This document shows, one piece after another, positions 26,399 through 63,480 of a stretch of 64,000 nt of DNA. The DNA is from Oopsacas minuta (lineage: Eukaryota; Animalia; Porifera), in the NCBI GenBank assembly GCA_024704765.1, contig JAKMXF010000343.1:620001-684000 (forward strand), written 5' to 3'. The first letter of the stretch is position 1, and every line of letters begins with the position of its first letter. A program made the position numbers and the translations under genes. The notes beneath the pieces are model-generated. The model was not told the DNA's origin. It searched no databases and saw nothing but the letters and a program-made list of their open reading frames with translations.

Positions 26399-29300
26399 AT
26401 GGCTGAAAGCATACCTGAGCTAAATTCCAAACGAGTCTCTTTCTCACAACCTAAAACTCCTGCTGTGGGTGTTGGTCATGGTGAGTGCTATAAATTAGAT
26501 ATTTATTTGATTGTTGTTAACTTGTTGTATGTATATCTATCCATCCAATTTTGAGAATTAATTTAAGTCAGGAAACTCGAGTATCTTATTAATATTATTG
26601 AAATTAACGCTCAATGAAGTTACGCGGTTTAGAACACCATATATAGATACATGAAATACACGCGAATACATAGGTAATAAAAATATTATTCTTCAAAGCT
26701 TAGTAAATATTAATTATAGTTCGCCTAAGCCTAAATAAAATACTATATGGTTCTTCTAGCCCAGGGGTTCCTAACCCTGGGTACGCCTGCATGTCTTAGG
26801 ACCAATTTATCAATTAGATATGTGAGTAATGTATTAAATTCGTGAATGTGTCAATCAATCTAAAATGGAATATCAAATATTAAAGTTTAAGATTCGGTAA
26901 ATTAGTTCTACGTATCTAATTCTCTTATTTTCTAACTTGTATAATACTCGTATAATACGTTATACGTGATCTATTTTAACTTATTATACGTCTAGGTTAA
27001 CCTCCAAATATGAGATTTTGACACTGTTAGACTTGTATAAGTCACATTATTATCATTTATTATATAACGAGGCTTTGGCTCGTCGCTTCGCGATGAACTC
27101 GGTGGATTACACCTCGAGGTATCCATTATTCTCCAAATTGACGTCCCCTTTGAGTATTATAATATAGATATATTTAGAACAATGTAATTCACAAATATAC
27201 GTATATGGCATATATATTATTGAATTATTTTGTAAGATCAACCCCCTTTGTAGCCGATGAGAGCAAGTATCTACGTACATTTTGAGATTTTGCTAATTTG
27301 TTTGATTTATATTCATGAAAACAACGATAAATTGACATATGAAAAACTTGAAAATGCAGAATTCGGATTCAGGGTACTTATTTACCCCTAGGTAGTCGTT
27401 TAGAGCCTGCCTATTCATAAAAACAACAATAAATATATTTACGCAACAACAAAACAAACAACAATTGAGATTTAGTAGTATAGAAGTTGTTTACAATACC
27501 ATATTCGGACTCAACATACTCGATTACCTCAGTATAACCACTGGAAGAATGTTTTCACCAAAATTTTGAAATTTGTTTACTTTGTATTCATAAAACAACA
27601 ATGTACTTACATATGATTAATCCAAAAGTGTGAAAATCGGACTCAGCACGTTCGATTTATTTAGTGAAGTTTCATTGAATTCTATTTACTTCCTTGATAA
27701 ACACGATAAAAACATAGTTATGCGACAATTTCAAAATTGCATACCGTAAATCCCTTCCTTGACAACGGACAAACAAGCAAACAACAATTGAGATTTAATA
27801 ATATAGAATAGTCAAACGATAATATTATTTCAGAAATAGAATTAAATCATTGAATTTAAAAATTACGCACAAAGTTCGAACTGATCAACTTCGAACCCGA
27901 CCCGACCCGACCCGAGAAATCCGACCCGATTCCAACTCTGATTCAGCAGATTTGCTTTAAAATCAATTTCTTAGCAAACTATGAAAATTATTTTTCCTTT
28001 AATGAGATTTATAAGACTGGACTCTTATTTTACTATAATTCGACAGCATGTATAGCCATATTTTAGTAGGCCATGGTGTGGGATTTGTTGAAAACTCTTT
28101 ATCAGTATAAATTTGGTACTAGCTTCATTGCCACACATAAGATAGCTCTTATATAAATCGGATTTGTGTGTTCCTTTAGAATATTCAACCCAGAATCAAT
28201 TCATAGAATAAATAATTGACAATAATCATGTGCTTACAATCCTATTGTTTTCTGACATAGGGGAAGATATATTTGTTATCCACGTGTGTGGCCTATCTAG
28301 CATTTAATATATAAATATTGATGAAATGAGATTGAGATTATCTGGCTATAATATAAACTAACTATTTTCCAAGTGATATATTGTTCTCGCATTTCTCATG
28401 GCATGGGCTATCAGGAAAAGGAGTACGAAGGACATAACTTATTGTACGTTTAATTATTGTATTTTCATCCTAAGTTGTTTTATTAGTGCATGTGAGGTAA
28501 ATTTCTTTTTTTGTTTTTCATCCATGAACGGCCCAGAACTGGATAGATACCTTTCTGAGCCTTGGATCTTGAATATTTTATAAAATCAATTTGACAAGTT
28601 GTAACCAATTGTGCAATTTAAATCGTGGAAAGTTACATTACTGGGATCGGGTAATTTTTGAATTAGTCCTTATCCCTGTACCGGTACTGCAAGCTAAATT
28701 CACCCGATACTCTACCTAACAAGGCCCCTGGTATGTGAATAATGGAATCTTATTTCAAATCTTATTTCTTCATCATACTAAATCAATCTTAAAATATGGT
28801 TATTAATTAATATTTTCGCGCCTTTTGGATATATTCCAGGGGTGGCGCTCGGGGGCTATACCCCTTTCGGAGAAATCATTGCAAAAATAATAAGATTGAC
28901 GAGCCGCTTAGCTTGTTCGCGCTGTGCGGCTTGCGAACACTATATTCGCATAGGACTCGGCACTTAGTGCCTCGAATTTAGCAAAGTATAAATTTGCGAA
29001 ATCAACAATTTGTTTACTATATATACAGAACAAAACAAAGATTTTACATAAGAGAGACTTGAATATTCTAAATTCGGATTCAGCATCCTTTGACACCCAT
29101 CCATAACTGTTAAAAGCAAGTCTCTACGTATATTTTAAGATTTCAAATATTTATTTACTTTATATTCATATGAACAACAATAAATTTGCATATGAATTTT
29201 TGAAAATGCGAAATTCGGAATCAGCGTACTGAATTACCCCTTTATGTATGATGAGAGCCAGTCTCTAAGTATATTACGGCATTTCAACTATTTATTTACT

Positions 29301-32300
29301 CTATATTCATAAAAACAACAATACATTTACATATGATTAATTCGAAAGTGTTAAAATCGGAATCAGCATATTCGATTACCCCAATGTAATTGTTTCCTTT
29401 TCCAATATAGTCAACAGAAGGATATATTATTCCCTATATCATATATGCAGATCATCTTCCCTTATCATTATAATACAAAGTAGACAATCAATCAAACAAA
29501 CAAACACCTCCATAATAATTGAGTTCTCATGATATAGATATGTGATTTATTTGTCATGCCAATGGTTAGAAATGCTACCTACGAATGTGCTCAAATACTG
29601 GAATTATCAATTCGTTATATTATTATGTCACATTGCCACAGAGTTACACGCGCGGGTATCTAACCGCAGCCCGGCCCGAAAATATCTAATATTGAGTAAC
29701 ATTTTAAGAACTCTAATTTAGATATATCAAAATAAATCCTTCGTTGTTCAAGAATTTTGTTGCGTGATAAATTGTTTTAGCTGCTTCAGAGTTGCACTCG
29801 TGCAGCAAACCGGCCTACAACAAGCCACCAGCAGGCCCACACAATAGGTACTACTAACGATTAGCATGTAAGTCAATGGCTTATCTGAACCCGCTAATCC
29901 GCACAGGGGCCTAGAACTTATTCAATTTTTGAACAATTGTTTCAAACGTAAAACATAGTAGATTTATACCATTCTATTACAGATCAATATCTAATGCTAT
30001 ATTACGCATTTTGGCCCCCATTCCATCGTTGTACAACTTTCTAAAAAAGTCCTCCCAGATTCTATAGTACTGTTTCAATGCATTTCGCTAATCCTAGCGT
30101 ATTATTTTGCAATCGAAATAGTGGCGTTTGGATTAGCGAGGGTATACTGTACTGGGTTTTTGCAGGCCGGTTACGAATTGCTGAGTAGGGCGTGGATAGG
30201 GCTTATTAAAATTTCAGGCGGCTGTTACAAAAGTTTGGCCCAACTCTGAACTGCTTTGCACGGGAAGCTAAATGGTGTACAGAATATACAAAGATAAATG
30301 TTAAATAACGATTCACCTCACAATATCGAATTTACAAATTCTTTATTTGTAGCTGATCAAGATATGGCAATAATTCAGGCCGGATGTAAGCTCTTCAAAG
30401 TCAGGGGTCGTAGAAAGTATTTGAGATTATTTTCCTATGATAGAGATCTGAATTGCATTGCATGGGAGTCTGCTCACAAGAAGACAACCAAATCTCGAAG
30501 TAAGTCAGCTGTTTGTTTGTATTTTTGTTTATGGTTATTATCTAGTTTAATAAACTGTACATTATTGTGATGGTTTTCTATTTTATAACCTTCTACTGTT
30601 CAACCAGGACTGGATCCAGGTGGCTTTTGTTTCTTAAAACTTGGTGCTAATATAATTCTATATAAATATATACATATGCTAATTACACTATAGACACCCC
30701 GAATGTGCTCGCAACGCTAAACTCCCCCTTTTGAACACTCATGGATCCGTCATTGTGTTCAATCAGAATAATACTCAATGAAAGTTATGAGCGCAACATA
30801 TTTATTAATAATCATTGTTCAATAATTACACACATATGTGTACAGTAGAGCCTATGAATACGTAAATATAGAACAAATTTCAAACTCCTGAACGCATGCT
30901 CATTATCGACTATCGAGTAGGTACAACCGAAATACAATTCAAAGAATGTTAACTTGTTATCCGTGTTCCTAATTCCTATTAACGTGTTCTACTGCTACTT
31001 TAATTGTATTATTACTTCAATAGTATATCTGAGTAACATCCACGAAATTCGTACTGGGAAAAGTACAGAAAGTTTTAGAAATTCTAAAGTCGGTCTTGAG
31101 TTCTCAGATGGTCAAAGTTTCTCCATTATTTACGGACCAAACTATGAGATTCTTGATTTGGCTTCCACTGAGGTCAGAATAATCAATGCATGGACTACTC
31201 TTCTACAGTCTCTTATCGGAGGTGAGATCTTCATTCACAATTTGTGTATTTGTTCACGTAATCTAAGCTAAGGGCACTCTTCTGATAAGCTTAATAACAT
31301 ACATACGCCCACTTTATATTAAACATGGACACAATCTTATATTTTCTATGGTATTCTAATACAGCATGGCGCTTATAGTTAACCACTTTCAGGCTTGTCG
31401 AAAGGTTCTACATAATAAGCATCAGGTTACGTCTCAAGTTAATCAGGTTATTTTCATTCTCAACCGTTATACTTGATATGATGTCAAAATGACCTGACCT
31501 TTTGAAAGCCTGACAACTTTATATTAAATTCTATTCTTAAACTAAGCTAGTGATCCTAGTTTACATAGGTAATAATGTTATGGATATTATTTTCGCCCAG
31601 TTGGGATAACAATAAGTGTTGTTTATTGACATAAATTCAACTTTGCATTACTCTCTTTTCAAATTTATAGGTCGCTCTGTGGAGTATCAGCCAATCAGAG
31701 ATAGGTAAGTATATTTAGATCTCGAAAATGTGAAAATTACAGTAGAATTAGGATAAGTCCTGTCTCTTAGAGAAACATAATAAATACGTACTATCCGAGT
31801 GTCCCTCTTACCCGAATTGATATTGTATTAAAATGAATAGGTATTAACTTTTTGGTTGAAGGAAGTAGTACGTATTAACCGACTGTGCTTCTTATCCGTA
31901 TTCTACCCTATATCAACTATTATTACCAGAATTGATTAAACAAAATCGATTTGGATTCTCTGTTTATTCTTTCTGAGGAATTACGACGCAAACACAAAAT
32001 TGTTATGTTAAGCTAGAAGAATTCTAAATATATATTATCTGTTGTTGAAGTGTTCATGTTGGTCTTATCTCTTCCTATTTCATATATCCCGATATTTCAA
32101 ACTGATACAGGAACTATCATGTTATGTGTTCGTGTTTCGCGCGCTTTTCGTGTCGTATAGCTGTAGAGAATAATTTTCTTGTTTTTCGTGATATTATGCA
32201 ATAAGGAAATTGACACGACATTCGGGCTCTAATTTAAACCCCTGTAGATGGCTGAAGGAACAGTTTGAATTGGCTGATAAAGACATGAGCGGAACTCTTG

Positions 32301-35300
32301 AAGAGAAAGAATGCTCAGAACTTCTACATGCATTGAACCTCAATATTAGCAAGAAACAGATAGGAATTCAATTTAAGGTAATTTACTATACTATTCATTA
32401 ATTCATATGTTATACCAGTTTTTTTCCGTTATGAATTTGTATTTGATGTACGTATTCTGGTCTAATTAGCATTCGGTTATCCGAACTCTTTCGTTTTTTA
32501 TTCAAGATTGGTGTCCAATTGAACAGGGAAGTCGTCTGGCAAAATCTCGTGCGCCGGGGCGCCCCATTGGCACTAATTGAAAACTGTAAATTTTGGCTCG
32601 CTTCCCTCGTGTCTAGCCTCATATATTATTCAATTTCACTCAAATATCAGCGGCTATATGTCTTGTATTGATCTATGTGCCTAAGTATTATTTTTCGAGT
32701 GTTAACCTGAGCACATATATCCATTTTTCATATACACAAACGTTGGCAAACCTGGCCTAGCCACCCCTCAGAGCTAGAGGGGGTATAAGCAGTAAGCTTG
32801 ATGTTAAACCTCCTGACGTTTGAAGTTAGATTCAACCCTGACTCGTGGAGGTAAATAGTATTTAATTAATATACATGAAATCATGGCGTTAAAAGGTGGC
32901 GCCACCTCACTTCTAGTGCCGCCTACGGCCCTGCCTCATGTTTTACGCGTGAACACCTTGCCCCTCGTCCTACCCCCTAGGTAAAAATCCTGGCGACGTC
33001 CCTGCAGTTGAAGTGAAATAATGTTCTGATATGTGAAATTCACTGCCTCGCGATAGACTACAATGTGGATTTGGAAAATTTGACTATCTATTTGTACCTA
33101 TATTTGCCAAACAGCTTAACATCTTTCAAAAATTAGTACTATGGTAATCTGAAGCTCTGTTCCGAGATGAAATTTTAATTGTCATAAACTGATGCCCTTT
33201 TGCATTTCTGATAACAAAGTATCGGATAATCAAGGCTATACTAGCCACTGTACTTCGTTAGTTTACCTATTAAGTTGAATTGCAGTTGCTTCTCCCACTC
33301 TACTATTACTTATAATACCGCGCTTTGCAGCTTTGGTTGTTAGGTAGCTTGAATGGGCTGACGCACATTTATAACCGCTTCATGGTTATTGCTCTCTCGA
33401 TCCTCTGTACCTAGAATAAGAAACTGAAAAATCTTTATTTAATTGCTTGAATTTACTTGTGACATACGTATTTTCACCTTTATAATTGACTCAATAGAAT
33501 TGCACGGCTGTTGGAGTCTGTGGAAGATTAATAACTTGTTTAATAACATAACGCACAATACTTTATTTCTTTAGCAATTTGATGCCAACGCTAATGGAAA
33601 ATTGGACTTTGATGAATTCAAGCAATTTTTTGAATCTCTTTCAACTCGAGACGAGATAGTTAAGATATTCAATGAGTGAGTATATTTATTTCTGTTTCTC
33701 ATGCATATGGAGTACATATATGCTTTTTAGATCCATATACTACAAACTACTTACATACTTCACCAAATATCTTAAACAGTATCGTTACTGACGGTATTTA
33801 TCACTCCATATCGAACATTAATCATATTCATTAAATAGAAGTACAGTCTAAGTCGCTATTTTGAACCCAGGCTCCTGTAATATATTTCTCATAGGATTTG
33901 TATATAAATTTACTAGTTAAATACCAAGGATTATACAATAGAAAGTCTATAATTAATTGAGGGAGGTCGGACGGTGTATATTTGATATCCTCCATTCCAC
34001 ACTTATAATTTCAACTGTAGATGTCCTTAAACCAGAGTTTTTAGAGCAATCTTTAATCCTAGGATATCCTCCGATCTCCATTCCCCTCTTGGAGAGGTTC
34101 CCGTTTATAGAGACCCCAATTATGTAGGTTGAGTTGTATTGTAAACAATACTTTCGGTCTCGTGCAGGGGTTTATCTAAGTGCTTGTCGAGAACTTAAAA
34201 GAGCCAGTTCAGCAGCCAGGAAGGACACAAAGTGCCGAGCGTGAGACTCAAATTCGTACAGGACCAATATTTACCAAATGTACCATACAAGGAGGGTCCT
34301 TGCAATAAATGTGCCGGCCCAGAACCTCCTGGATAAACCCCTTTCCCTTGGGGGTAATTACAATATGACTGTTCAATTTTTAATATATCTAAAAAGAGGG
34401 AAATATGGAAATACCAAAATACCGAAAAATTGTTCTAATTATTGGAAATTTCGGAAATTCTTATCGAAAATTTCAATATTTTCGATATTCTTAGGAAATC
34501 CCGATATCCAAGTTTTCGATATCATATCGGAATATACGATACAAGTATTTTCGATATTTTTCATCTCTGATATATCGGTACCAAATCTTGACTTTAGTAT
34601 TACTTGGCAGCTACAATACCAGAAGGGACCTCCCACAATTTCACAACAAAATGAACGCATCTTTAGCACAGCTCGTCATAAATTGTTCTCTTAGTGTTAT
34701 GGCAAGAGTTAATTAATTATTTATTATGTCAATATATAAATACACGAATCAGCTTAAGTTAATCTTAATCTCTGCTCTTTACCACATATTACGTTTTATT
34801 TTTTGGCTAATAATCTATAAATGACTAATTTGAATTGCAAAATTCAGTTACAAGCATACTATAATAGTTATTATTAGAATAATTAACTATTCTTATCCTG
34901 CAATATTGCTATCACCGATTTGCATTCAATAGGTGTTGTGGGGTCTTCGTATGGTTACACTGTTATAGATCTCATCAGTTAAATCTAGTCAGCCCCTGTT
35001 GATCGGTTTATAAGGAAACCTATGTGTATACTTAGGTACTTATTACTATTATACTTCAATTAAGGAAACTTGACCATAAGGGACTACCGTTTAGAGCGCT
35101 AGGTTAAACATTTAAATCCAATTTATTATCCCCAAACTTACTCTGAGATATACTTCATGAATCACCATTTTTTGGTCAATTCTAATTGCAAATGAATTCT
35201 TCTATGACCATTTAAGGAAAGGGGGGAAAGACTATTTTAAATTTCATCTACGAGTACAGTTTAACTCGGTTAGTACGTAGTTTTCTGCGAAACGGTTTAT

Positions 35301-47300: not shown

Positions 47301-50300
47301 TCATTTTATGATAAAAACACCAAATTTTGTACATTTGTACATGAGCGTATCATAAACATTATTGGATATTTAGGCATTTGAAATGGTACATATGTTGGCC
47401 ATGGTTGCTGTCCGAAAATTTTGATCTCCAATAGAATTCACCATAATTAACCTTATCAATAATTTCTTCATACTAGGTTAGATCTTTTTTATTACTGAAT
47501 TCGGATTCAGCGTAAAATTCTACGTCGTTTGAGTGGTCACTCGAATATTGGAAATATTTTTCCCAACCTACGCAGGGATGTGGTAACATTCCATTCTCAA
47601 AATTTTATAATCCCACCGAGTGATCCCTCTTACTATAATTACAATATATAAGATGTAAATCATGCTATTTGACCAAGTTTTAAATGTTACTGTCATGAAC
47701 GATTTGTTATTTTAAATTGTCTAGAACTACTTAACATGGTCAATTACAGAAATATACCTTGTTTGGATGATGTATTATCAAATGTCTATTCATTGGGGAC
47801 TCTATGCATTATATTAAACTGTTACATGTGTGTCTCTGCAATTATAATAAAAAATTCTGTAATAAAACAGAGAATGACATCATATCTATAATAAATACGT
47901 GAAAACTGGCAAGAAAATATAAGGTCGGGGGGCGATCCCTTAAAATAGTATATGAATATATTTGGAGGGTGGATATGTTTAAAACTAGACTCAGCTAGCC
48001 TAGCGCCGTCGAAAGAGGGTCGAGGGATCACCCGGTGGGGTTAGAAAATTTTTGAGAATGTTATGTCGCAACATTCTTGCGTTGCTATGGAAAAACTATC
48101 CCCAAATATATTTGAGTGACAACTCAAACGACGCGAAATTTACGCTGAACCCAAATTCAGATAATTGACCCCTTTAAAACCTTCGTACTATGTGATCTAA
48201 CATAGTATGGAGAAGTTATTGTTAGGGAGCAATTATCTGAATTCTATTGGAGGTTAAATTTTGTGGACGAGTAATGATTGAAGTTGTCCTATTGCACTCG
48301 CATACTATCCTCAGCACTTATAATCTTGAGCAAAGTAGTACTACAATAAGAAAGATTCAAATGTAACCCTGATTGAAACTGTCTCTCAGATAATTCTATT
48401 ATTTTGGGTAATTATTAGTTTATAACTATGCTTTGTATTCGGTCAGATATTCATAGCCGATTTTTTCATACATTTATCTTTTTAGTACATTTTTTAGAAA
48501 AAAATCAAACTCTCTGTTAAGCTCTCAAAAGTGGTTAACTATATCCAGGCTTCACATTTCAAAGGATTGGACAAATCGCTTAATCATGAGAGTACGTTCT
48601 ATATTTTCGAGTACTCACATCCATGCTTGTATTTTTACTTTATTTTATACTATTTTATTCTTCTAGCTAAGTATTATACCATGTCTTCTTTCAGTGAGCC
48701 TAAAGTAGAATCTCTAATGAGTAAGGAGGGATGGAAATTTGTAGAATACAACAAACGTCAGATAAGTAGGATATACCCGAAAGGATCTAGAATTGATTCT
48801 TCTAACTATAACCCTGTCCCTATGTGGTATCATGGAAGTCAAATTGGTAAGTTTTATTTTTGTTGAAACAAATTTATTCGGGGGCTATTCATTTGTTCAA
48901 AAATCTGAAATTGTCATTTGTTCGACAAGTATTTTCTATGGTGTCATTTGTACTTCTGGGCCTTGAGAGTTGGCAGGAAGTTACCTCCACCTCCTACTTG
49001 TTGCTAAGCTTTTATAACTCACTAAGAAAGTGATAGAATTGGAATTTTCTTGGATTATCTAACTAGATTGCATTTAGCAGAGATTATGAGCATTTCTACT
49101 CACTATTTGGGTAGCAGTTGTTGTTTTTTATAGCATTATTGTTGTATCTTGGCCTTGAGAGTTCGCCAGAAATATCTCACATATTCCGCATTTCTTATAT
49201 CCTCCCAGAACCAATTCAAATTGATTGGATTGCACTAATTCTCCCATAAAACCGCTACACGAAACACAACATGCAATCTAGTTCGATAATCCAAGAAAAT
49301 GATGATACAATCACCTTTTAGTGAGTTATAAACACATCTAGCAACAAGTAGGGGGTGAAAGAAACTTCCGGCCAACTCTCAAGGCCAAGATCCAACGATA
49401 ATGCCATGAAAATCCACAACTGCTATACAAATAGCCTTAAAATACAAACTTCAGATTTTCGAACAAATAACAGCAAACAAATTCGAACGAGTGAAAGCGC
49501 TCCCTTAATGGGTAATTAATGAAGCTTGACCATCAGGTAATCATTTCACTTATGTAACCAGAGACAGAACCATGCAATTTATTTTCAATACCTCGGGTTA
49601 ATCGGGTGATTCGGATCAACACCTTCATCGTCATATCTATTTATCTGCTTTATTCATTAACAAGACTTGGATTAATGGAGTTTACCTTATTTTGATCTCT
49701 TGCATAGCTTTGTGTTCCTAAACATCATTCAAGAGTGTATTGTTCATAAACGAGAGAATTCATTTTTCTTTCCCAATTTTCTATTTACATTGCTATATCC
49801 TTATTTTATTTGTAGATATTATTAGTATTTGATATTTTCATCATTGCGATTGTGGCACTTTTGTTTCATATTTTGTTTTTATTTCTAGTTGCTCTAAATT
49901 ATCAAACGAATGGAGAAATAATGGATATCAATAATGGATTTTTCAATCAAAATGGTAGATCTGGCTATATTAAAAAGCCTGCTTGTTTGAGAGAGAGATT
50001 TCTTGCGTATGATCCGTCTAGCACAAATACAAGAGGTGTTCCGGGTGTTATAGGAAGAAAGTACACCATCGTAGCAATTTCTGGACAACAACTACCAAAG
50101 CCATCTAGCTCAACTCGAAGATCGGAGGTAAATTTAGTTTCAGTAATAATTCCTATTTTCTCTTTTGATTTTAAACAGAATTTTATTTCAATTATTCAAA
50201 TAGGGGAACCTTACATCCGAAATTTTTTGTTAGTATCTCAGAATTTCTAATAGCAATCTCGATCGGCAAAATTAAGTAAATCCGATTTCGACTGTATTCT

Positions 50301-53300
50301 TTTGAACAAGTTGTATAGATTTTGTAGTAATCGGTGCATAGAGTACAAGTTTCTAATAGATCTCTGTTTCTCCAATTGTATGTTATATGATTTATTCGTG
50401 TACATTCTTATTCCTAGGTTATAGACCCTTATGTCCAATTTACAGTTTATGGACCTGGAATGAACAATCTCACTTTTAAGACTAAGATGATTTACGATAA
50501 TGGGTTCAACCCTAACTGGAATGAGACATTTACTTTTGAAGCAAAATTTCCTGAAGTCAGTCTCGTCCGAATTGTTGTCTTTGATTATGATCGACTAAGT
50601 AAGTATCCGAACTTCTAATCTCCGGGCATGCCTTCCCCTTCATAATTACATTATACTTTGTATAAACAACCTCAAATTTCAAGAATGTTTTTACATAATC
50701 CCTTGGTGTTCGGATAATCGAGTTTGCATCTTATTTCGAATATTTGTTCAGCTTTTTAAGCTTTTTGGTTCAGCTTCTAGCTTGAAGATTCCTGAATAGC
50801 ATAAACTTCATTATGTGACTGGTACCTATACTTTTTGGGTAGAGATTTGCTCCCTAGGGTATTAATTATAATCTATCCTCTATTCAATGTTAAATTCTAA
50901 AATATGCTCACAATTATATTCACAAACTGCACCACAATCCCTTACTTGGCCACAATTCTATACATAATTCATTTTTCCTTTACAGGCGAAGATGATTTTA
51001 TCGGTCAGTTTACAGTTCCCATCAACTGTTTAATGCCTGGGTACAGACATGTTCCTCTTTTAACCAAAGAAGGAAACATTATAGAATTTGCTTCTGTATT
51101 TTTACACATTACAGTGGAAGATGAACGTATAAACTTCAAGAGGTTTGTTTCATTTCTAATTGAGGATAAATATATTTATTTACCTCACAACTAATACTTC
51201 ATTATATTCGACCATATTGAAGGTCGCCCTACTCTTTGCATATATTTTTGGGTATTTTATTTTCTAGCCATAGGCGTAAAAGTACCCATTCTGGGGGTTT
51301 CAGTTCAGGCTCCTCTGGTCTGGGATCTGGTTCCGGACCCCCTCAGGTTTTGTTGAAAATTTGGAAAGTTTTGCGCCCATGTTTCTAGCACGACCTTCAT
51401 ACTCAGAAATACGACATTTATGTTAGGAGTTTGTGTTCGGACCCATTACTGTACAGGGGGAGACAACACCGATTATCCATTTTGTAGTATAAATATAAAT
51501 ACTCTTACTTACAGTAATTAAAAACATTGGCTAGCTCGCGGCTCACATATTAGCCAACAGATAGGTATTTAGTAAGATCTAATTGCCCACCCCCATATTA
51601 GTGAAATCCCCCGCCCTAATGTTCATTTTATTATGCCGCTGAGCATTGTTCCATTTGTTTATAATACTAATAGCGCGCATCGCTTGCTAGGTAGCTGCGT
51701 GACAGCTTAGCGTCTCAGGTTAGCTTAAGTATTAAATAGCAAAATTTCTTAGTGCAATTGGTCGCGATCAGATATCCTGACACTACTTGCCTAGAATATA
51801 TAAATAGGAAAGTTTTAAGATTTTATTATCCATGGTCCTTCCGAATTACATTTAATGGTCTTCTGTGGTGACATTAGAGCTACTACGTCGCTCTTACCTT
51901 TTGGATAGTAATCTCGGACCTTCATGCCTCGGGTATTAAGACAGACTAAAAATTTTCGAAATTTGGCGTGACATTGATTATTTATACAGTCATGATGACG
52001 TAATAATTCTATGATGAGTTTGCATTTGGGCACAATCATGGAGTCAGGACATTTGACTTATTGAGGGGTACCTGTGGTTCAATTTTCAAACTTCTATCAT
52101 GTATATTGGTTGAGCAGTGGTTTTTAATTTTAATTTTCGAAAATCCAAAGAAGTGACAATTTCGTCATAATTGCGTCATAGGTGTAAATCAAACTTGTGC
52201 GAGCCAGACCAAAATACTCCTGTGAAATCAGCCCTCCGATTAATCGCTTTTTAATAGTATAGATACAGTATACGGCTAAGTCTGCCTACTAAGAAGAGTG
52301 GTTAATGCTAATTTGTATAATACGCGTATACCATATAATCTAGGGCTTAACTAGCATTGAAGCAGAAGGCAATTGCCTCCTCGCTTTTTCTGGTGTTGCC
52401 TCATCTCCCTATTATATCAGCCTTATATTGAGGAAAATATCCTTCCTTGCCTACTCGCTCTGGAATCTCTAGTTAAGCCCCAGACAATACGTATTTTTAA
52501 ACGTATAATACGTTATACGTGATCTTTGTAACGTATTACATCTAGATTAACCTCGAAGAGATTTGTACCGTAGGGTATTATGAGATTTTGACATTGTTAG
52601 ACTTGTATGAATCACATTATTATCAAATATTGTATAATTTTGTCAACTATGCTGAGATTTCTCATTAACAATTCGAAAACTACTGTTTTGATGCAAATAT
52701 TTATTGCAGAAATCAGCGTAATAGAAATTACGTCACCAAAAACTATAGATTGAATGTAAAATACGTATTATATGTAATACGTCTTCATTGAAAGACGTAC
52801 TAAACAATTTGGGTTAAATGTATCCGTATCCGTTGTTCAAAGGTGGCTACTCTACAAGTACATAGGTTACAAAATGTTGATTCTAACTGTAGGAGGTTTC
52901 ACTTTCCGCTATTGTTACATGAAGAGATATGGAGCTTCACTACTTAATAACTTTTTACTCTGCCGACTATACTTTTACTGATTCAACTAACTTGGTACAC
53001 AATCGCTAGATTATGGGAAAGTAATTATCGACACAATAGACACAATTCGCATGACGTCATAAACCGCGGAACATTTGACACGCGAATAACTCAATAGCGA
53101 TAATAGCTAAAGTAATACTTCCAATTGATGAAGTGTAGAATAGGTTAGGATGGACAGAATTATGACGTCACCATGGTGGTGCTGCTGACCAAGCAAAATT
53201 TTTAAAAAGTTAGATTTCGAAAAATTACAGAAAAGTTTGGACACATTCACAAAAGTTTTGTTATTTTTTGCAAAGTCAACATGACGTCACGGAATATTAG

Positions 53301-56300
53301 AATGCTATAACTCCGTTTTTATAAGAGATAGAGAGTACTTCCAACTGATGAAGTGTACTACATGTTACGACGGACACATTGCGCATCATAATGATGACGT
53401 AACAATCGTGGGGTAATGATGAAAATTTGAGAATATTGGAATGTTTTTATCCAATTTTACAATAAACTGCGAGCGTAGCGAGCAAAATATATAAATTTCC
53501 AACTTGTGCCAACTGCTTAGTCTATTGATTAAATTTGTTTAAAGTTGCACTAGTAATTGGAGGCACTGTAAAATGAAAAATTTAACCAATACTAGTGCCT
53601 CCAATTAATAGTGCCACTTTGAACAAATTTAATCAATAGACTAAGCTGTCTGCACAGGTTGTAATTTTTTATTTTTATTTTTGTAATTTAATAGAACTGA
53701 GGATTATCGAGCTCAAAACAGAAAGATTTCAAGGAATATTCCTCGTGAACTCGCCACATTGCTTGTCGATATAGAAGGACTCATGGTTAATAGCTTCACC
53801 TTATTTGATAACTTTTATCACTCATTTTCTGAACTGAGGGTAAGGTTACTTGATTCTATTATCTCACTAATATTTTATCCAATTCATAATCGAGTTATCA
53901 AAATCTGCTATTGATTTCTCGAATTAGCCCCAAGCTGCGCTGTTGCATGAGTAATTTACCCCTTCAACAATATACATATTTCCCTTATTGAGAGGATCCA
54001 ATTCACATGCATCAGCTAACCTAGCGGTTCCCAACCCTTTTCACCCGTTGACCACTTACAGCAATTTAACACATTCTGTTGACCCCGCCCATAGACTGTT
54101 TTCGACTTTTGAGATCCTGTTATCCTCTGCTCACATCCGCGGATCACCAAGGGGTCCATGGACCCCAGGTTGGGAACCTCTGAACCGCCTATTTGCAGAT
54201 TTTTTACTGTTTATACATATGTACTATATTTGTAGAAATCTTTGGGGTTGAATCAAGAAGCTTCAATTATTCAATGTTTGAAGAGTATCTACAGTCGTGA
54301 TCCCAATATGAAAATCCGGCTTACTAAAACAGAAACAAATGAAGTTAGTCAACTCCTAATATACTATTCATTCTATAATTTCTCGTTTATTTACATATTA
54401 TCTATTTTCTCATATACAGTGGAACCTGCATAAAGCGACACCTGTATAATCCGAGAGATCTTTATGAAATAGCTTCAGACAATACAAATTCACCTGCATA
54501 ATCCAACAATTTGGTACACCAACTAAATTATCACGCCCCAACGGGTGTCGGTTTATGCAGGTTCCGCTGTACTCTTACTCACGGCGTCGCGTAAATCTAT
54601 CATAGTAGCTATACGCTATTCCCTCGCAATTTCCCCCGCCTTCCTAGTGCACTTGCCCTGGTGCCTGTTGGAAAATTTGCCCCGGGCCAAAAGTGTTCTG
54701 TCTTATTTTTTAGAAATAGAGCTAATCCATCAAATACTTTCTAACACCTCCAAAGCGTGTGAGGGGATACATAGCATATAGGGAACTTTCACACTAATCT
54801 ATTAGACAGTTGTGCAGACAACTCTAATGCAACTTAACGGACGCTGGAGCATGAACTTTTGTTTCTAGATAGGTACAAAGTTTTTACCCGGACCAACTTA
54901 GACTGCCAAAACTGGCCCATTGGGACCACATTTGGACTGTTGGACAAGTTCAGGCGACCTAATGTGGGCCGGCTGGAACAATTTTGGCGTGAAAGGCCCC
55001 TAGCAATTGTTGCTCAAATCTTATACTGCGATTATTTCGTTTGAGCTCTACCAACCGTTAAGGGAACAGGGAACTTAATGTATTACAATCCTATTGGAGT
55101 GTTTCCCCAGGGTTCATATATGATTTTGATTTGGGGGGGGGGGAAGAAAAAAATGGTGACTGGAAAACAGTAGTTTGCGAAAGAATAGGTCTCGCGTGTA
55201 CTCCTAGTGGTACAGCGTACACTAGATGTTTTTCAAGGGGTACACCGATAGATTTCAAAATTAAATACAAAGAATACGAATAATTACCAAATCAATAGTG
55301 CCCACCGATCAAATTATTACACTGTCCGACAAAATTTGAAAGTTTTTTGCTTCTTGGACATTATATATTGCCTTATAACTTTCGATTATGGTGAGTCCGA
55401 ATCTGAATTCTGTTATACTCCAACACGTAACAATTTTATTCGCAAGCTGCATTTGTCAGAATTATGAAGTTGTCAGTTGTAAGAAAAATTGATATTTTAA
55501 TATTGTCTCTTGTTAGAATTCTTTGGTGTCTGATAATAATTGTCAGAGTAACCACAGTACAGATTACTTTTGTTATTTGTTAACGAATTTGTCATTTGTG
55601 TTGTTTGTTATATTTCTGGTGTTAAGTCAATCTAAAATCTAAACAATGAAATACACATTCACAAATTGATTATACTAACTTTGTATTCTAATTGATAATT
55701 GAGTTCAAACAGTTAATAAATAAACTCTGACAATTACAATTAATAAGAGTAACAAGTTGAATACCGACATGTGACAATATTACAAAAGTCCATTCTGACA
55801 TATGACAACTATTATCAGAGACCAGTTGAATTTTAAAGAATTCAACTCGCAAACTTGGAAAATGGCATAAATTACCAAAATATTTCTACCTAAATATCAA
55901 GTAGTCATGTAAAACCTGGAGGATTATTAAACTAGCGGTTGTTTTGAATTCATTGATTATAAGAAATAGCTCTGTATTGGCTAAACCAGGTATTTATATG
56001 GCATTTTACGATCTTTTGTGATCTTTCTCATTTTTGGATGTATAATTCGAATTTCGTTAGTAGAATGACCAATTTAGCCTATACGTAGCTCGTTCTGGTT
56101 TATATTTGCTCTAGTACTCTATAGTTTAAAAATCCTCACAAGTTTACATGACTAGTTGATATTTCGGTAAATATTTTTGCCAATTTTTGTAATTTTCCCA
56201 TTTTGTATGTAAAATTCTATGAATTGTTATGTGATGGAGTATAATGGAATTCAGCATAGTCGATAGTACATAAGGCAATTTATAGTGTCCAAGAAGCAAA

Positions 56301-57388
56301 AACTTTCAAAATTTGTCGGACAGTGTTATCAAACCTTTACAGTTATAGTTTAGCACATAATTATTAATTTATTAGTGAAAGCTATATTGTAACTCCCTAT
56401 TTTGATCATAATATATTGAAGTTCACATAGCTGCATAGGATCTTTGTTTAATGTTATATGTTCAACATCATTGTTTTATACACAAAACAATAATAAACAT
56501 ACGAAAATTCAAAGTTTCTCATGGGAATAATTGTGCCTGGGGGGAGTTCCAGCCCCATTTTGTCTGAAACCCTGCCCCCTACAAAAATGGTTCCCCCATA
56601 TGATTATGAAATATTTAACCATGAATGGTGGGTTTCGTATATCTGCTTGGATGTTGTTCTAAGATATTTTGAGGCACTCCTCTCTTTGTCGAGATGCTTT
56701 ATGCTCTAATGAGACTGTATTGGAATGAAAAGCTTTCTTTCCAATTGGCCATCATAATGATGACGTAACCATAGCGCACGTGATGATAACATATCAAATG
56801 TTCAAATATTGATATTGGACCAAAAAATGTTGTATACAATTTCAAAAATTGGCATTACGTCAGAGACTTTGTCAATAATTACAGTCTGTGCCGATGGCAT
56901 GGTACATTAGTTGAATTTGTTTATAGTGACACTATTTGTGTAGGCACTCTATCTATCATCTATCTTAGTTAGATTTACCTTACTTTTGAGTCTCCAATTA
57001 ATAGTGTCACTTAAATTAATTCAACTAATATACTATATTGTCAGCACATACTGTATTTTTATATTTTTTTATTATATATTATCTAAATTAGTATCTGATT
57101 GAGACGGAGATTGGAGATAAACTTGAATCTAACAGGAGTATTAACTTATTGAGAGAACTGGTTAATCAGTGTGATAGGGTATCATCGTTATCTCCGCAAA
57201 TGCTTACTGCCCTTGAAAAGGCAACACATAATTGTAGGAATGTGCTGAGATTGAATGCAAAAGTTCTCAATTCAACCATTGGTAGCTCTTATAAACTTTT
57301 TGATATGGCAATGGTAGTGGGGAGTGTTTGGACTCAAGAGACAAGATTAAAAGAAACATGTGTGGAAGTTCAACTCACTCTAGACCTA
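26399..57388 (+). CDS. PLCL: Phosphoinositide phospholipase C of the PLC-delta/PRIP (PLCL) group: RVxF-PH-EF-X-Y-C2-PRIP-type C-terminal extension; 21 exons, >=990 aa; final exon/stop unresolved
   Basis: Hand-assembled GT-AG exons, all phases compatible, 2970 nt: 26399-26480, 30353-30499, 31024-31221, 31671-31704, 32248-32377, 33575-33675, 41680-41746, 42655-42745, 42862-42979, 43720-43805, 45011-45131, 45845-46013, 46866-47090, 48498-48591, 48667-48846, 49889-50127, 50418-50598, 50986-51142, 53695-53839, 54236-54343, 57092-57388. Motifs: [99 protein letters not shown]. The PLC call is near certain; the PLCL subfamily call is about 0.75. Confidence 0.95.
30605..30755. mobile_element. hAT-type MITE in PLCL intron 2
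   Basis: TIRs CAGGACTGGATCCAGG / rc CAATGACGGATCCATG; TSD TGTTCAAC (30597-30604) vs TGTTCAAT (30756-30763). Confidence 0.75.
35586..38315 (+). CDS. Uncharacterised intronless coiled-coil protein (~909 aa from ATG 35586; frame open from 35424), nested in PLCL intron 6 on the same strand
   Basis: A 963-codon stop-free frame in very AT-rich DNA. N-terminal heptad-rich region, S/T/N/Q-rich middle, short coil [35 protein letters not shown], helical C-terminal domain. It lies inside intron 33676-41679. Confidence 0.88.
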   Translation: MDKILCSKSKQQQIDAILCNYEGERKQQHQEETKDELVKIRQRVDLMMEVYDNELENRTESSQIEFFNSLEEVQRIFENKQVKSNYLNQFRVFVVGLQSGFEKKHAILHSLCDSLSQLQDRFALDTIDSSHSEASLNQYSIDGALSTLHRSIQRLDGIKSAMRKVFKIQNTNVETEISSENVQESLDMAEEEMKSISSSLNKMRKLVAVSNNKIQSLHSRVEKTDQENRILKSLLRQLQDIPSVSNHLDENTSQSIKEMIMSSEQDSQYLTTSKSRIIYSPTNSIPHDTQHTTAPTSNKQTSAHKQISDLNINSVKSSNESKVQQESEIPELRKQIFRRQYAQKIDTRIVSDQRSLSPSSNNHIEPLLSDICIPLPEAPGSDSEIEGNIQKVLVNPTQQNTTTATIMETLHSLVQTYNSRNLVSSTNRSRSNHNINQFDNVTLQQQTHTTSLRNSPISIKHPDVLHSPPSMSCDKINSFLDSNTSDLPAIISSNCMDSVCLALREQLQALQQLRIQEARDFKRRIYSMQMELNNFRIHKPQTILNQFASSHQSGSEYNTESSYVDNKFIQPNLATNRGGNPSIEISEILSLISEIHNVFIDVVTQSSKDDTDSLQTLKFSSVNMNISNVWLNLKRSLAHLTGLVDTEVTINGAVDSVHNVIHDTYLKLFDASFSEQSNIRLREVFLQIEDSFQKFAHRESLEQPSEVSLFTQLDIANNCKTLDNCDIARSITSSKKLFIVALSNFYTNLTFLRWSIFKRFLTKYSNLSLAIRCDDQELKEIIKQEMSRFKISEQRILHQILMRRVFIAKRLTEELILLEKSTGKYFIKPIYTLPNHKPTPPLVLAISSLSSNTSKGVPKIFNKYEYHSTDLCTQPKSMMRQELSLHSAHISCPITAATWKPKLAYLPDN
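38517..38945. repeat. Head-to-head pair of family A fragments just 3' of the nested gene
   Basis: AGCCGTTTTGCTTGCTC ... GAGCAAGCGAAACGGCT (16/17 inverted match); the interior switches from forward to reverse family A sequence. Confidence 0.55.
40666..41606. mobile_element. Foldback-type (near-palindromic) non-autonomous element, ~0.94 kb
   Basis: Perfect 20-bp inverted repeat AAAGATAAGGCCTGATCACT at 40677-40696 and 41575-41594; an inner arm at ~40855-40935 pairs with ~41175-41260; no clear TSD. Confidence 0.75.
42989..43288. mobile_element. hAT-like insertion at the 5' end of PLCL intron 9
   Basis: TAGAGGTCGCAAGC left end (also at ~57574), CGGGC-rich subterminal repeats, 8-bp TSD TTAGTTGC (42981-42988) vs TTAGTTGT (43289-43296). 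The right TIR is degenerate. Confidence 0.6.
46121..46436. mobile_element. hAT-type MITE with ATCGAT/ATCCA subterminal repeats
   Basis: TIRs CAGGGATGCTAATCCAATCCAATC / rc CAGGGATAACAATCCAATCCAATC; TSD CTATTTAC (46113-46120) vs CTATATAC (46437-46444). Confidence 0.85.
52720..53500. repeat. Interspersed repeat with internally duplicated units rich in TGACGTCA
   Basis: Duplicated unit TTCCAA.TGATGAAGTGTA...GGACA...TGACGT.A at ~53119 and ~53339; GCGAGCGTAGCGAGC at ~53470 (Helentron-like end motif); related piece at ~56740-56800. Confidence 0.55.
54417..54569. mobile_element. 153-bp pogo/Tc1-type MITE in PLCL intron 20
   Basis: TA|CAGTGGAACCTGCATAAAGCGACACC ... GGTGTCGGTTTATGCAGGTTCCGCTG|TA. Confidence 0.88.
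55320..56325. mobile_element. Non-autonomous CACTA/CMC-type element
   Basis: CACTG...CAGTG termini, ~55-bp TIR (CACTGTCCGACAAAATTTGAAAG...TTGCTTCTTGGACA), 3-bp TSD TTA at 55317-55319 and 56326-56328, many internal TGACA/TGTCA repeats. Confidence 0.8.
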
Positions 57389-60300: not shown

Positions 60301-60525
60301 ACACATTTCCGTATATAGTAATATCCTTATTATATCGACATCAGTTAGCTTTAGACAGATATAATGCACTAATTTCACTTCGAGCCGGATGAATATCCTA
60401 CATAATTGTAGAAATACATGTCATCAGTCCAGACTCCAGAAAAGCATATATTTTGGAAATGTGCCAATTTTTGCTTAGTAAGCACTAATCTAAGAAATTA
60501 TTTACTCTAAATTGATCTGTCTTAG

Positions 60526-60836
60526 ATGTATGTATGTATGTATGTATGTATGTATGTATGTATGTATGTATGTATGTATGTATGTATGTATGTATGTATG
60601 TATGTATGTATGTATGTATGTATCGGTATGTATGTATGTATGTATGTATGTATGTATGTATGTATGTATGTATGTATGTATGTATGTATGTATGTATGTA
60701 TGTATGTATGTATGTATGTATGTATGTATGTATGTGAATGTATGTATGTATGTATGTATGTATGTATGTATGTATGTATGTATGTATGTATGTATGTATG
60801 TATGTATGTATGTATGTATGTATGTATGTATGTATG
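60526..60836. repeat. (ATGT)n microsatellite, ~310 bp with two interruptions
   Basis: Directly visible; abuts a reverse-oriented family B fragment (~60840-61050). Confidence 0.98.
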
Positions 60837-61560
60837 ACTCAATGGTCTACTGTATATTATATTATCACCATTCTGATATATCTTAGCATTTTGAGTGCCG
60901 CTCCTATAGGAATGGCCAATTGGCATGGATGTGCAATGTGCGTAGATCCGTTCGTCCACCAATCCTGCAAAATATAGTAGGCCGATAGAATTAAAATTGG
61001 TAAAGGTATATAGGTACATTTTGGGCCGGAGATTTGCACCTACGTTATATAAAATCTTAAAATATGGGCTTATCGCACAGAAGATAAGTCTCTCATGTTA
61101 AGCAAAGTTAGAGGTAATTCTTAATAAGTTATGGCTATCACTAATATAAATTAATATAAAGATGGTTCCACCACTTACCACCATTCAGTCTATTTTCCAC
61201 CAGTTTCCACCATTCAGTCAAACCTGTTAAATATTGCATCTTTCATCAAAGAGTAGAGATGAAATGATCTATAGATGCATTTATGCAAAAGTTAGCTTGT
61301 TCTTGAGTTACATTATAGACAATGGGGCATTTTTATGAATATTCAATAATAACTCTATAATCGTGGATTTTTTTTCAACCAGACAATGGTAGAAAACTAT
61401 GGCACCATGGATCATTAGGATTGTCAATCGACCCTATTTTCCTGGCGTTCTAAATCATTGAATGTAGTGGATTTCATTAAGGATTTTTGTATATTTAATC
61501 TCTAAGCCAATACTATTTTTACTTTTTAACAATTACGCTAATGAGGAAAGGTTAAGCAAT

Positions 61561-62766: not shown

Positions 62767-63480
62767 CGACAAACTGGTAGTAGTGCAGCTCAGGTTTATG
62801 TATTTCAAATTCTATTGATAAAATTCCGAATAATTATCATACAATGACCCCCTGTCTAACTTTTAACGAAATCTCTAGCATCAATTAGAAATATGTTCAA
62901 AAAATGTGAAAATATGATAAATCTAATAGATTTATATTTGAAAATGAAAATTTTGTAACCTATATACTCTACTACCCCTTACTAGCAGTTAAAATGAAAT
63001 CTCTAGTATGATTTGAAAAATAGACCAGAAGGTGTGAAATATGACTAATCATATGATAAATCATTTAGATGTAGATTTAGAAATGTCAAAATTTAAATCT
63101 ACATACTCAATGACCCTTACTAACAGTTAGAACGAATCTCTACCATGATTTTGAATAATATACGAAAAGGTGTGAAAATATGATTATTCATATGATAAAA
63201 CTGTGAATTTGTAACTTTCAGACTCTGAAATTCTCAAAATCGGACTCTACGCACCCAATTTCTCCTTGACAACATGTTGAAACCTAATCTCTAGCTTGCT
63301 TTTGTATTTTACATAGAAAGGTGTGAAATATTCCCTTTAAAAATAATCATACCCGTCGCGCAAATCTCCGACCCAAAATGTATATGTAAGCTAATTTTAA
63401 TGTTGATTCAACTGCTAGATTTCGCTTGGCCGCGCGGACGGACGGCCATGCCATTGGGGCATCTCCCTATAGGAGCAGCA
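62767..63480 (+). mobile_element. Repeat family B, copy 2
   Basis: Collinear with 16993-17760, with an internal duplicated AAGGTGTGAAA(A)TATGA unit. Confidence 0.8.

What the first reader, a model, noticed from the sequence alone, without database searches (positions are those of the whole stretch)
26399..57388. A PRIP/PLCL-like gene that keeps an intact phospholipase C active site
Seen in sequence: the assembled protein has every PLC-delta1 catalytic or substrate residue equivalent: H311/N312 (SHNTY), E341/D343 (CVEMD), H356 (YHGHT), E390 (IENH), K438/K440 (IKGK), S522 (SFSE), R549/Y551 (SRIY). It also has PRIP-type traits: an RVxF motif before the PH domain (SKRVSFSQP, cf. PRIP KKTVSFSSMP), [34 protein letters not shown], and a long post-C2 helical extension containing [13 protein letters not shown] (cf. 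PRIP CGLPPIASLKQCL). Established knowledge: vertebrate PRIP-1/2 (PLCL1/2) are pseudoenzymes that scaffold PP1 and bind IP3; as I recall they have lost the H356 and E390 equivalents. Inference: this may be an ancestral-state PRIP that is both an active PLC and a PP1 scaffold, i.e. the condition before pseudoenzyme formation.
Basis: partly seen in the sequence, partly recalled or inferred. Interest (0 to 1): 0.82.

Follow-up and report, generated by a model that had tools for sequence, protein, structure and literature searches.

The report
Glass-sponge PLCL-type phospholipase C, active site intact
This glass sponge has a transcribed gene for a phospholipase C of the kind called "inactive" (PRIP/PLCL) in vertebrates; its catalytic site is complete, but so is that of every other non-vertebrate relative sampled, so the gene is an ordinary early-branching family member.

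Summary
A 20+-exon gene on the + strand (26399 to at least 57388, 3' end not found) encodes PH–EF–X–Y–C2 with all eleven PLC-delta1 catalytic or substrate residues intact.

Two features outside the core tie it to the PLCL/PRIP lineage:
- A KRVSF (RVxF-type) motif lies 20 residues before the PH domain. PLCL-type proteins carry it at 19 in 126 of 131 cases. The only other carriers were four cephalopod PLCL2 proteins.
- A post-C2 extension scores 18.1 bits against a profile of the PLCL extension, and 0 of 1000 shuffles reach that score.

One public run behaves like RNA. It covers the C-terminal exons and confirms a splice junction I had predicted.

Limits:
- The core-domain tree is unresolved. 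The AU test rejects neither a PLCL-type nor a delta placement.
- A vertebrate-only extension profile finds nothing.

The intact active site is not special to this sponge. All 48 fully scorable non-vertebrate extension-bearing proteins keep it. Only vertebrate PLCL2 (H356T) and PLCL1 (H356N plus E390Q or G) have lost it, apart from a few lophotrochozoan exceptions.

Verdict: a new member of a known family, of moderate interest. The scan had already noted the nested intron gene (s1-305074).

The parts
26399..26480 (+). Exon 1: start codon and the KRVSF (RVxF-type) motif, residues 11-15
   Evidence: ATG, an ATG|GTGAGT donor, and a phase that fits the exon 2 acceptor. The motif lies 20 residues before the PH profile start, against 19 in the PLCL family. 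No RNA evidence was obtained for this exon.
30353..30499 (+). Exon 2: first half of the PH domain
   Evidence: Splice chain; PLCL profile hit E 4.8e-9.
31024..31243 (+). Exon 3: second half of the PH domain; donor uncertain
   Evidence: Pfam PH_12. The strong GGAG|GTGAGA donor at 31221 is out of phase, so only the weak donor at 31243 fits.
32206..32377 (+). Exon 4: EF-hand 1 with a canonical Ca2+ loop ([12 protein letters not shown])
   Evidence: Pfam EF-hand_1/6/7; acceptor choice.
33575..33675 (+). Exon 5: EF-hand 2 with a canonical loop ([12 protein letters not shown])
   Evidence: Pfam EF-hand_1 26.2 bits; AAG|GTAATT to TTTAG| junction.
41680..41746 (+). Exon 6: small EF-hand-region exon after an 8-kb intron
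   Evidence: CAG acceptor in phase 2 and AAG|GTAACT donor in phase 0. Collinear weak profile match to positions 287-312. The same boundaries are implied by scan note s1-305074.
42655..42745 (+). Exon 7: EF-hands 3/4 region
   Evidence: Splice chain.
42862..42979 (+). Exon 8: start of the X domain, with H311 and N312 (SSHNT)
   Evidence: Pfam PI-PLC-X; residues.
43720..43805 (+). Exon 9: X domain, with E341
   Evidence: Pfam PI-PLC-X 33 bits; phase-1 junction giving CVE-M-D.
45011..45131 (+). Exon 10: X domain, with D343 and H356
   Evidence: Pfam PI-PLC-X; gap-free alignment to the PLC-delta1 chain 1djg_A.
45845..46013 (+). Exon 11: X domain, with E390 and K438
   Evidence: Pfam PI-PLC-X 60 bits; alignments to solved PLCs.
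46866..47090 (+). Exon 12: K440 and the acidic, Ser-rich X-Y linker
   Evidence: Splice chain. The acidic GDVSDEDE block is shared with delta, eta and PLCL.
48498..48591 (+). Exon 13: start of the Y domain
   Evidence: Splice chain; profile match.
48667..48846 (+). Exon 14: Y domain, with S522, R549 and Y551
   Evidence: Pfam PI-PLC-Y 70.7 bits; gap-free alignment to 1djg_A 385-442; 75% identical orthologous exon in a related sponge contig.
49889..50127 (+). Exon 15: end of the Y domain and start of C2
   Evidence: Pfam PI-PLC-Y; splice chain.
50418..50598 (+). Exon 16: C2 domain
   Evidence: Pfam C2 49 bits.
50986..51142 (+). Exon 17: end of C2 (GYRHVPLL...), with a phase-2 donor
   Evidence: Profile hit E 3e-16; AAGAG|GTTTGT donor.
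53695..53839 (+).
   Evidence: Phase-2 acceptor that fits exon 17, and an AGG|GTAAGG donor. In run X4 a GT..AG joint 53838->54235 and depth of about 22,000.
54236..54343 (+). Exon 19: extension block [18 protein letters not shown], matching the family block CGLxPxANLKQCIRxL
   Evidence: Best non-C2 hit of the extension profile among 1446 ORF segments (E 0.31). MAFFT places it on the family block. X4 depth about 19,000.
57092..57388 (+). Exon 20: long helices of the extension; ends at a GTTAGC donor with no stop
   Evidence: X4 depth 26,000-55,000, dropping to about 22 after 57400. Collinear part of the 18.1-bit profile alignment. The acceptor (57092, 57104 or 57110) was not settled.

Best explanation
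The locus is the glass-sponge member of the PLCL/PRIP-type branch of the delta-like phospholipase C superfamily. The architecture is a short N-terminus with an RVxF-type docking motif (KRVSF), then a PH domain, two canonical Ca2+-binding EF-hands, an X-Y catalytic barrel, a C2 domain and a roughly 190+ residue helical C-terminal extension.

Shown: the exon chain is open, the C-terminal exons are transcribed, all catalytic and substrate residues are those of PLC-delta1, and both flanking features match the PLCL family.

Inferred: the protein is a Ca2+-dependent PI(4,5)P2 phospholipase that the PH domain brings to the membrane. It can also dock protein phosphatase 1 through KRVSF. The Ser inside RVSF would be a likely phospho-switch, as in other RVSF proteins.

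This combined state is the common non-vertebrate condition of the family. The pseudoenzyme state arose later: H356T in vertebrate PLCL2, H356N with E390Q or G in PLCL1, and separately in a few invertebrates.
For: - Domains on the exons.
- Open 1000-codon chain.
- Residues against solved PLC-delta1 and family alignments.
- [RK]x0-1V[ST]F within 45 residues before the PH domain: 126 of 131 extension-bearing proteins, always at distance 19. The sponge has it at 20 and Oscarella at 22. The 4 of 69 carriers counted as lacking the extension are cephalopod PLCL2 proteins fetched after that scan.
- Post-C2 189 residues score 18.1 bits against a profile of 26 PLCL-type extensions. 0 of 1000 shuffles reach it (maximum 9.1-9.4) and the reversed sequence scores 2.1. 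The alignment crosses three exons in order. The score is still 12.7 bits (0 of 1000) with the homoscleromorph sponge rows removed from the profile.
- The same profile hits demosponge proteins that were not used to build it (60 and 77 bits). It misses the delta, eta, Sycon and filasterean PLCs checked, and no protein outside the family exceeded about 12 bits.
- The ML tree puts the sponge with the homoscleromorph PLCL-type pair, sister to the PLCL clade (62/90).
- RNA-like run X4: exon-only depth and the predicted 53839|54236 junction.
Against: - The core-domain tree is a polytomy. The sponge plus homoscleromorph node has support 31/0.
- Holding the sponge with all delta sequences costs only 1.8 lnL (AU p 0.44).
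- The highest pairwise identity (43-45%) is to a delta-4-like or a demosponge protein.
- The extension match is weak in absolute terms. It is 13.7 bits when the whole protein is scored, next to an unclassified 547-aa protein at 12.4. It is not significant with a vertebrate-only profile. tblastn with PLCL extensions found nothing in the window.
- Exon 1 has no RNA support. A bare RVxF-like pentapeptide would turn up by chance roughly 0.4 times in the upstream 4 kb (my estimate).
- The 3' end, the exon 3 donor and the exon 19-20 joint were not observed.
- No enzyme or binding data exist for any non-vertebrate PLCL.
- C. elegans PLL-1 is reported to carry the His mutation (PMC2266627).
Confidence: 0.7

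Rival explanations
1. It is an ordinary PLC-delta-type enzyme, close to the delta/delta-4-like stem. Its N-terminal KRVSF and its helical tail resemble PRIP by chance or by convergence, so it has no special relation to PLCL.
For: - The AU test does not reject sponge plus all delta (p 0.44).
- The best identity is 43% to a delta-4-like protein.
- The EF-hand loops are canonical as in delta and eta, whereas they are degenerate in cnidarian and bilaterian PLCL.
- A vertebrate-only extension profile gives 1.4 bits.
Against: - The delta, eta and filasterean PLCs checked have neither an extension match nor the pre-PH V[ST]F motif.
- The sponge has both, at the family's positions. The extension score is beyond all 1000 shuffles.
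- Homoscleromorph PLCL-type proteins also keep canonical EF-hands.
Confidence: 0.2
2. It belongs to the PLCL lineage but, like vertebrate PRIP, works only as a phosphoinositide/IP3-binding scaffold. Hydrolysis would be blocked by something other than the eleven tabulated residues, for example the X-Y linker, the extension or the lid.
For: - Vertebrate PRIP X-Y still binds PI(4,5)P2 without hydrolysing it (PMC6726632).
- The X-Y linker is long and acidic, which is the auto-inhibitory type in PLCs (established knowledge).
- No non-vertebrate PLCL has been assayed in the papers I could search.
Against: - All eleven catalytic or substrate residues are kept here and across more than 600 Myr of non-vertebrate PLCL lineages. 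This argues for selection on catalysis.
- Lineages that did lose activity show it at exactly these residues.
Confidence: 0.1

Closest known systems
Vertebrate PRIP-1/PLCL1 and PRIP-2/PLCL2 (phospholipase C-related catalytically inactive proteins)
   Same: - PH-EF-X-Y-C2 core.
- An RVxF-type V-S-F motif about 19-20 residues before the PH domain. In PRIP-1 this is the PP1 site; that is from my own knowledge of Yoshimura 2001 and Terunuma 2004, which are cited in PMC5390332.
- A helical post-C2 extension containing the GL...QC block.
   Different: - The sponge keeps H356 and E390. PLCL2 has H356T, and PLCL1 has H356N with E390Q or G.
- The N-terminus before the motif is 10 residues rather than about 90, and it lacks the PRRSSIIKD block.
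- The EF-hand loops are canonical.
- Homology of the extension is seen only through invertebrate and sponge intermediates.
Invertebrate and sponge 'inactive phospholipase C-like protein' orthologues (e.g. Nematostella P0185, Sanderia P0401, Saccoglossus P0209, Oscarella P0286, Corticium P0398)
   Same: - Full catalytic residue set.
- The pre-PH motif: Sanderia has the identical KRVSF and Oscarella has KQVTF.
- A C-terminal extension of about 190-250 residues.
- Oscarella and Corticium also keep EF-hand Pfam hits.
   Different: - The sponge sequence is on a long branch (1.2-1.3 changes per site) and is only about 40-45% identical in the core.
- It does not fall inside the strongly supported cnidarian plus bilaterian PLCL clade (100/100).
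PLC-delta1/3/4
   Same: Domain order, all catalytic residues, the acidic DVSDE-type X-Y linker, and functional-looking EF-hands. The mechanism is probably the same: Ca2+-dependent PIP2 hydrolysis with PH-domain membrane targeting.
   Different: Delta enzymes end shortly after C2 and have no V[ST]F motif before the PH domain.

Membership tests
PLCL/PRIP lineage (orthogroup) | PH-EF-X-Y-C2 core of the delta-like type | tested here: met
   Pfam PH_12, EF-hand, PI-PLC-X, PI-PLC-Y and C2 on successive exons.
PLCL/PRIP lineage (orthogroup) | RVxF-type [RK]x0-1V[ST]F motif about 19 residues N-terminal of the PH domain | tested here: met
   KRVSF at distance 20. The family has it in 126 of 131 proteins at distance 19. 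Outside the family, the only carriers were four cephalopod PLCL2 proteins that had been counted as lacking the extension. Exon 1 itself lacks RNA support.
PLCL/PRIP lineage (orthogroup) | Conserved helical extension after C2 (no Pfam model, no solved structure) | tested here: met
   18.1 bits against a 26-sequence profile with 0 of 1000 shuffles reaching it, and 12.7 bits without the sponge rows. The match is weak: a vertebrate-only profile is not significant. No Pfam or PDB entry covers this region.
PLCL/PRIP lineage (orthogroup) | Branches with PLCL rather than delta or eta in a core-domain phylogeny | tested here: inconclusive
   The ML topology is (sponge, homoscleromorph pair) + PLCL with support 31/0 and 62/90. 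The backbone is a polytomy. AU p is 0.26 for one clade of all extension-bearing animal proteins and 0.44 for sponge plus delta.
PRIP in the functional sense (catalytically inactive protein) | Loss of the catalytic His356 equivalent (and E390 in PLCL1) | tested here: not met
   The pattern H311 N312 E341 D343 H356 E390 K438 K440 is HNEDHEKK, like 48 non-vertebrate relatives. Vertebrates show HNEDTEKK or HNEDNQKK.
PRIP in the functional sense (catalytically inactive protein) | Binds PP1 (and PP2A), Ins(1,4,5)P3, GABARAP | not testable with these tools
   Only the docking motif and the basic PH residues (K-V-R...R-L-F) can be read. The partners are listed in PMC5390332.
PLC-delta | Intact catalytic residues and Ca2+-type EF/C2 core | tested here: met
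PLC-delta | Protein ends soon after C2, with no pre-PH PP1 motif | tested here: not met
   At least 184 residues of transcribed coding exons follow C2, and KRVSF is present.

The most novel reading that the evidence does not exclude
The PLCL/PRIP family did not begin as a pseudoenzyme. From the sponge-eumetazoan ancestor onward it was a catalytically active phospholipase C that also carried a PP1-docking motif and a dedicated helical tail. The tail is perhaps older still, because a choanoflagellate PLC has it. Catalysis was then lost independently in vertebrates, nematodes and a few lophotrochozoans. If so, the database name 'inactive phospholipase C-like protein' is wrong for nearly all invertebrates, and a PLC-PP1 coupling module exists that nobody has assayed.
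Probability: 0.5. Interest if true: 0.6.

Novelty: new member of a known kind. Interest (0 to 1): 0.45.

Why it matters
PRIP/PLCL is a textbook pseudoenzyme, and when and how it lost catalysis has not been mapped in the papers I could search. This gene, together with the residue table across 150+ relatives, places the loss on the vertebrate stem and shows that sponges already had the family's two accessory features. That makes a simple experiment worthwhile. Assay any non-vertebrate PLCL for PIP2 hydrolysis and for PP1 binding, to see whether lipid signalling and phosphatase scaffolding were once joined in one protein. It also flags a systematic misnaming: NCBI calls these proteins 'inactive', while UniProt calls the same proteins phosphoinositide phospholipase C.

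Tried and rejected
- The exhaustive representative search with the Y-domain ORF returned no full-length protein of this species. The best full-length hit was a Rigifila tandem PLC.
- The atlas search with exon 20 gave only generic helical fungal hypotheticals.
- tblastn of PLCL-type proteins, and per-exon profile searches, gave no significant hit in the C-terminal region. Only the spliced chain is significant.
- The G/S-rich ORF at 51268-51346 was first taken as an exon. Its donors are out of phase with 53695, so it was dropped.
- The ORF at 62860-62955 resembles profile positions 143-165 (E about 1). Its acceptor is in phase 1 and cannot follow exon 20, so it was left unassigned.
- A related sponge contig (L001, ±10 kb) holds only the exon 14 orthologue, so no exon footprinting was possible.
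- No run is on record as RNA. Run X4 was recognised as RNA-like only from its depth pattern. The exon 19-20 joint was not listed.
- A Foldseek PDB search of the modelled PLCL extension found only generic helical bundles (E at least 0.03).
- Literature searches found no paper on catalytically intact invertebrate PLCL.
- PMC6729171, needed for details of the PP1 site, is not held.
- A first 56-row careful tree did not finish and was replaced by a 38-row tree.

Full report
**What is there**

The window comes from a glass sponge, according to the scan's own notes. On the + strand, ORF pieces between 26.4 and 57.4 kb carry Pfam PH_12, EF-hand, PI-PLC-X, PI-PLC-Y and C2 in the order of a delta-like phospholipase C.

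Canonical GT..AG sites with matching phases chain them into one open frame. I read the small EF-hand exon at 41680-41746 independently; scan note s1-305074 implies the same intron boundaries. I also added a C-terminal exon at 53695-53839. The current model has 20 exons and 1000 codons without a stop.

Exon 20 ends at a GTTAGC donor, the same donor type as three other introns of this gene, and no stop codon precedes it. The exon 3 donor is also unsettled: the strong GTGAGA site at 31221 is out of phase, and only a weak site at 31243 fits.

**Transcription**

No public run is labelled as RNA. One of four runs from the same sample (X4) nevertheless behaves like RNA when laid on 53600-59599:
- Depth is about 20,000-55,000 over 53695-53839, 54236-54343 and 57092-57388.
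- Depth is 0-22 in the introns and beyond 57400.
- A GT..AG joint 53838->54235 appears in this run only.

That joint is exactly the junction I had predicted for the new exon. The three DNA runs are flat. The C-terminal exons are therefore real and spliced. The exon 19-20 joint and exon 1 were not observed.

Gap-free alignments to the solved rat PLC-delta1 chain 1djg_A (chain index + 132 = residue number) place D343 and H356 in exon 10. They place S522, R549 and Y551 in exon 14. Family alignments place H311, N312, E341, E390, K438 and K440. All eleven are the delta1 residues.

**Which family**

Named relatives were gathered in three word-index searches.

The core-domain phylogeny used 38 rows and 879 columns, under LG+C20+F+G4 with ultrafast bootstrap and SH-aLRT support. 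It recovers a 100/100 cnidarian plus bilaterian PLCL clade. Nine lineages remain in a polytomy: the sponge, Salpingoeca, Sycon, the homoscleromorph pair, the demosponge pair, cnidarian delta-4-like, eta, delta and PLCL.

The ML topology is (glass sponge, (Oscarella, Corticium)) sister to PLCL, but with support of only 31/0 and 62/90. AU tests reject neither hypothesis:
- One clade of all extension-bearing animal proteins plus the sponge: delta lnL 6.0, p 0.26.
- The sponge with all delta sequences: delta lnL 1.8, p 0.44.

**Two flanking characters decide more**

*The pre-PH motif.* I searched the 45 residues before the PH domain for [RK]x0-1V[ST]F.
- 126 of 131 extension-bearing proteins have it, always 19 residues before the PH profile start.
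- Four of 69 other proteins have it, and those four are cephalopod PLCL2 sequences that were fetched after the classification scan.
- The sponge has KRVSF at distance 20, the jellyfish Sanderia has the identical KRVSF, and Oscarella has KQVTF at 22.

*The post-C2 extension.* The 189 post-C2 residues were tested against profiles of the post-C2 region.
- They score 18.1 bits against a profile of 26 PLCL-type proteins. No shuffle out of 1000 reaches this (maximum about 9), and the reversed sequence scores 2.1.
- The alignment runs in order through exons 18b, 19 and 20.
- The score is 12.7 bits (0 of 1000) when the two homoscleromorph sponge rows are removed from the profile.
- It is 1.4 bits (57 of 1000 shuffles reach it) with a vertebrate-only profile.
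- MAFFT independently puts exon 19 on the family block CGLxPxANLKQCIRxL.
- The profile also finds demosponge proteins that were not used to build it (60 and 77 bits) and a choanoflagellate PLC (24 bits). It finds none of the delta, eta, Sycon or filasterean PLCs checked.

I conclude with about 0.7-0.75 confidence that this is the hexactinellid PLCL-type gene.

**What is not PRIP-specific**

EDQIRGP, the acidic GDVSDEDE linker, VIDPYV and PGYRHVPL have the same consensus in delta, eta, sponge and protist PLCs. Unlike cnidarian, bilaterian and especially vertebrate PLCL, the sponge keeps two canonical EF-hand loops. So do the homoscleromorph proteins (Pfam columns).

**How unusual the intact site is**

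It is not unusual. I scored H311, N312, E341, D343, H356, E390, K438 and K440 in 157 extension-bearing proteins:

| Pattern | Count | Which proteins |
|---|---|---|
| HNEDHEKK (all intact) | 48 | Non-vertebrate, by the names the sources give to those I could match |
| HNEDTEKK (H356T) | 95, plus a few variants | Vertebrate PLCL2 |
| HNEDNQKK or HNEDNGKK | 2 | PLCL1 |
| H311Y with E341A | 2 | The nemertean Lineus and the annelid Paralvinella |
| E341D | a few | Molluscs |

C. elegans PLL-1 is reported to carry the His mutation (PMC2266627). The sponge gene therefore shows the general non-vertebrate state, not a unique relic.

**Mechanism**

Shown: the architecture, the intact residues, transcription of the C-terminal exons, and the family-specific flanks.

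Inferred from established PLC-delta enzymology:
- Ca2+-dependent hydrolysis of PI(4,5)P2.
- PH-mediated membrane or IP3 binding, because the basic K-V-R...R-L-F residues are present.

Inferred from PRIP biology (partners listed in PMC5390332; the site detail is from my own knowledge):
- PP1 docking on KRVSF.
- The motif's Ser as a possible basophilic-kinase switch.

The extension of the Actinia orthologue models confidently (pLDDT 86, pTM 0.75). It forms helices, a beta-hairpin and two roughly 40-residue antiparallel helices. It has no Pfam family, no solved relative and no specific fold match. Its role is unknown.

**Verdict**

This is a new, early-branching member of a known family. The general point may deserve a bench test: most "inactive PLC-like" proteins outside vertebrates look catalytically competent.

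Noticed in passing
window 35424-38315 (+), inside the intron between 33675 and 41680: An intronless 963-codon ORF (910 codons from the ATG at 35583) sits on the same strand as the PLC gene. It has no Pfam hit. The ESM Atlas holds the identical sequence with a poor model (pLDDT 0.40). Its look-alikes are coiled-coil or centrosomal proteins at lead level only. The scan already noted it (s1-305074).
   Followed up: partly
P0265 (Salpingoeca macrocollata, 1104 aa), residues about 898-1053: A choanoflagellate PLC that also carries a PDZ hit matches the PLCL-type C-terminal extension profile (24-25 bits, E about 1e-7). It lacks the pre-PH V[ST]F motif. The tail may therefore predate animals.
   Followed up: partly
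P0180:809-1058 and relatives (alignment A1, model mf7343b10c1f2): The PLCL post-C2 extension is a conserved, confidently folding domain of about 220 residues (pLDDT 86). It has no Pfam model, no PDB relative and no specific Foldseek match, so it is an undescribed domain of a well-known protein family.
   Followed up: partly
P0299 (Lineus), P0386 (Paralvinella); P0304, P0394, P0395 (molluscs): Some invertebrate PLCL proteins show independent changes in the catalytic set: H311Y with E341A in a nemertean and an annelid, and E341D in some molluscs. These may be separate routes to a pseudoenzyme.
   Followed up: no
window 60494-60883: A long ATGT-type microsatellite reads as MYVC repeats in all three + frames. 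It lies downstream of exon 20 in what is probably still an intron.
   Followed up: no
window about 54020-54600 and 56640-56690: The DNA runs show many loose ends and joints here (for example 54048->56666 and 54055->54149). There are also several heterozygous SNPs and 1-2 bp indels between runs and the assembly. This suggests repeat copies or haplotype differences inside the introns.
   Followed up: no
L001 (ENA ERZ20067936 ptg000016l, 123433-143654): A related sponge contig has a 75% identical orthologue of exon 14, but no other PLC exon within ±10 kb. It also has ORFs with HTH_32 and DDE_3 transposase hits. Introns there are much longer, or transposons have been inserted.
   Followed up: partly
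window donors at 42979, 43805, 54343, 57388: Four of the gene's 20 donor sites are GTTAG(T/C) rather than GTAAG or GTGAG. This may be a species-typical donor variant.
   Followed up: no
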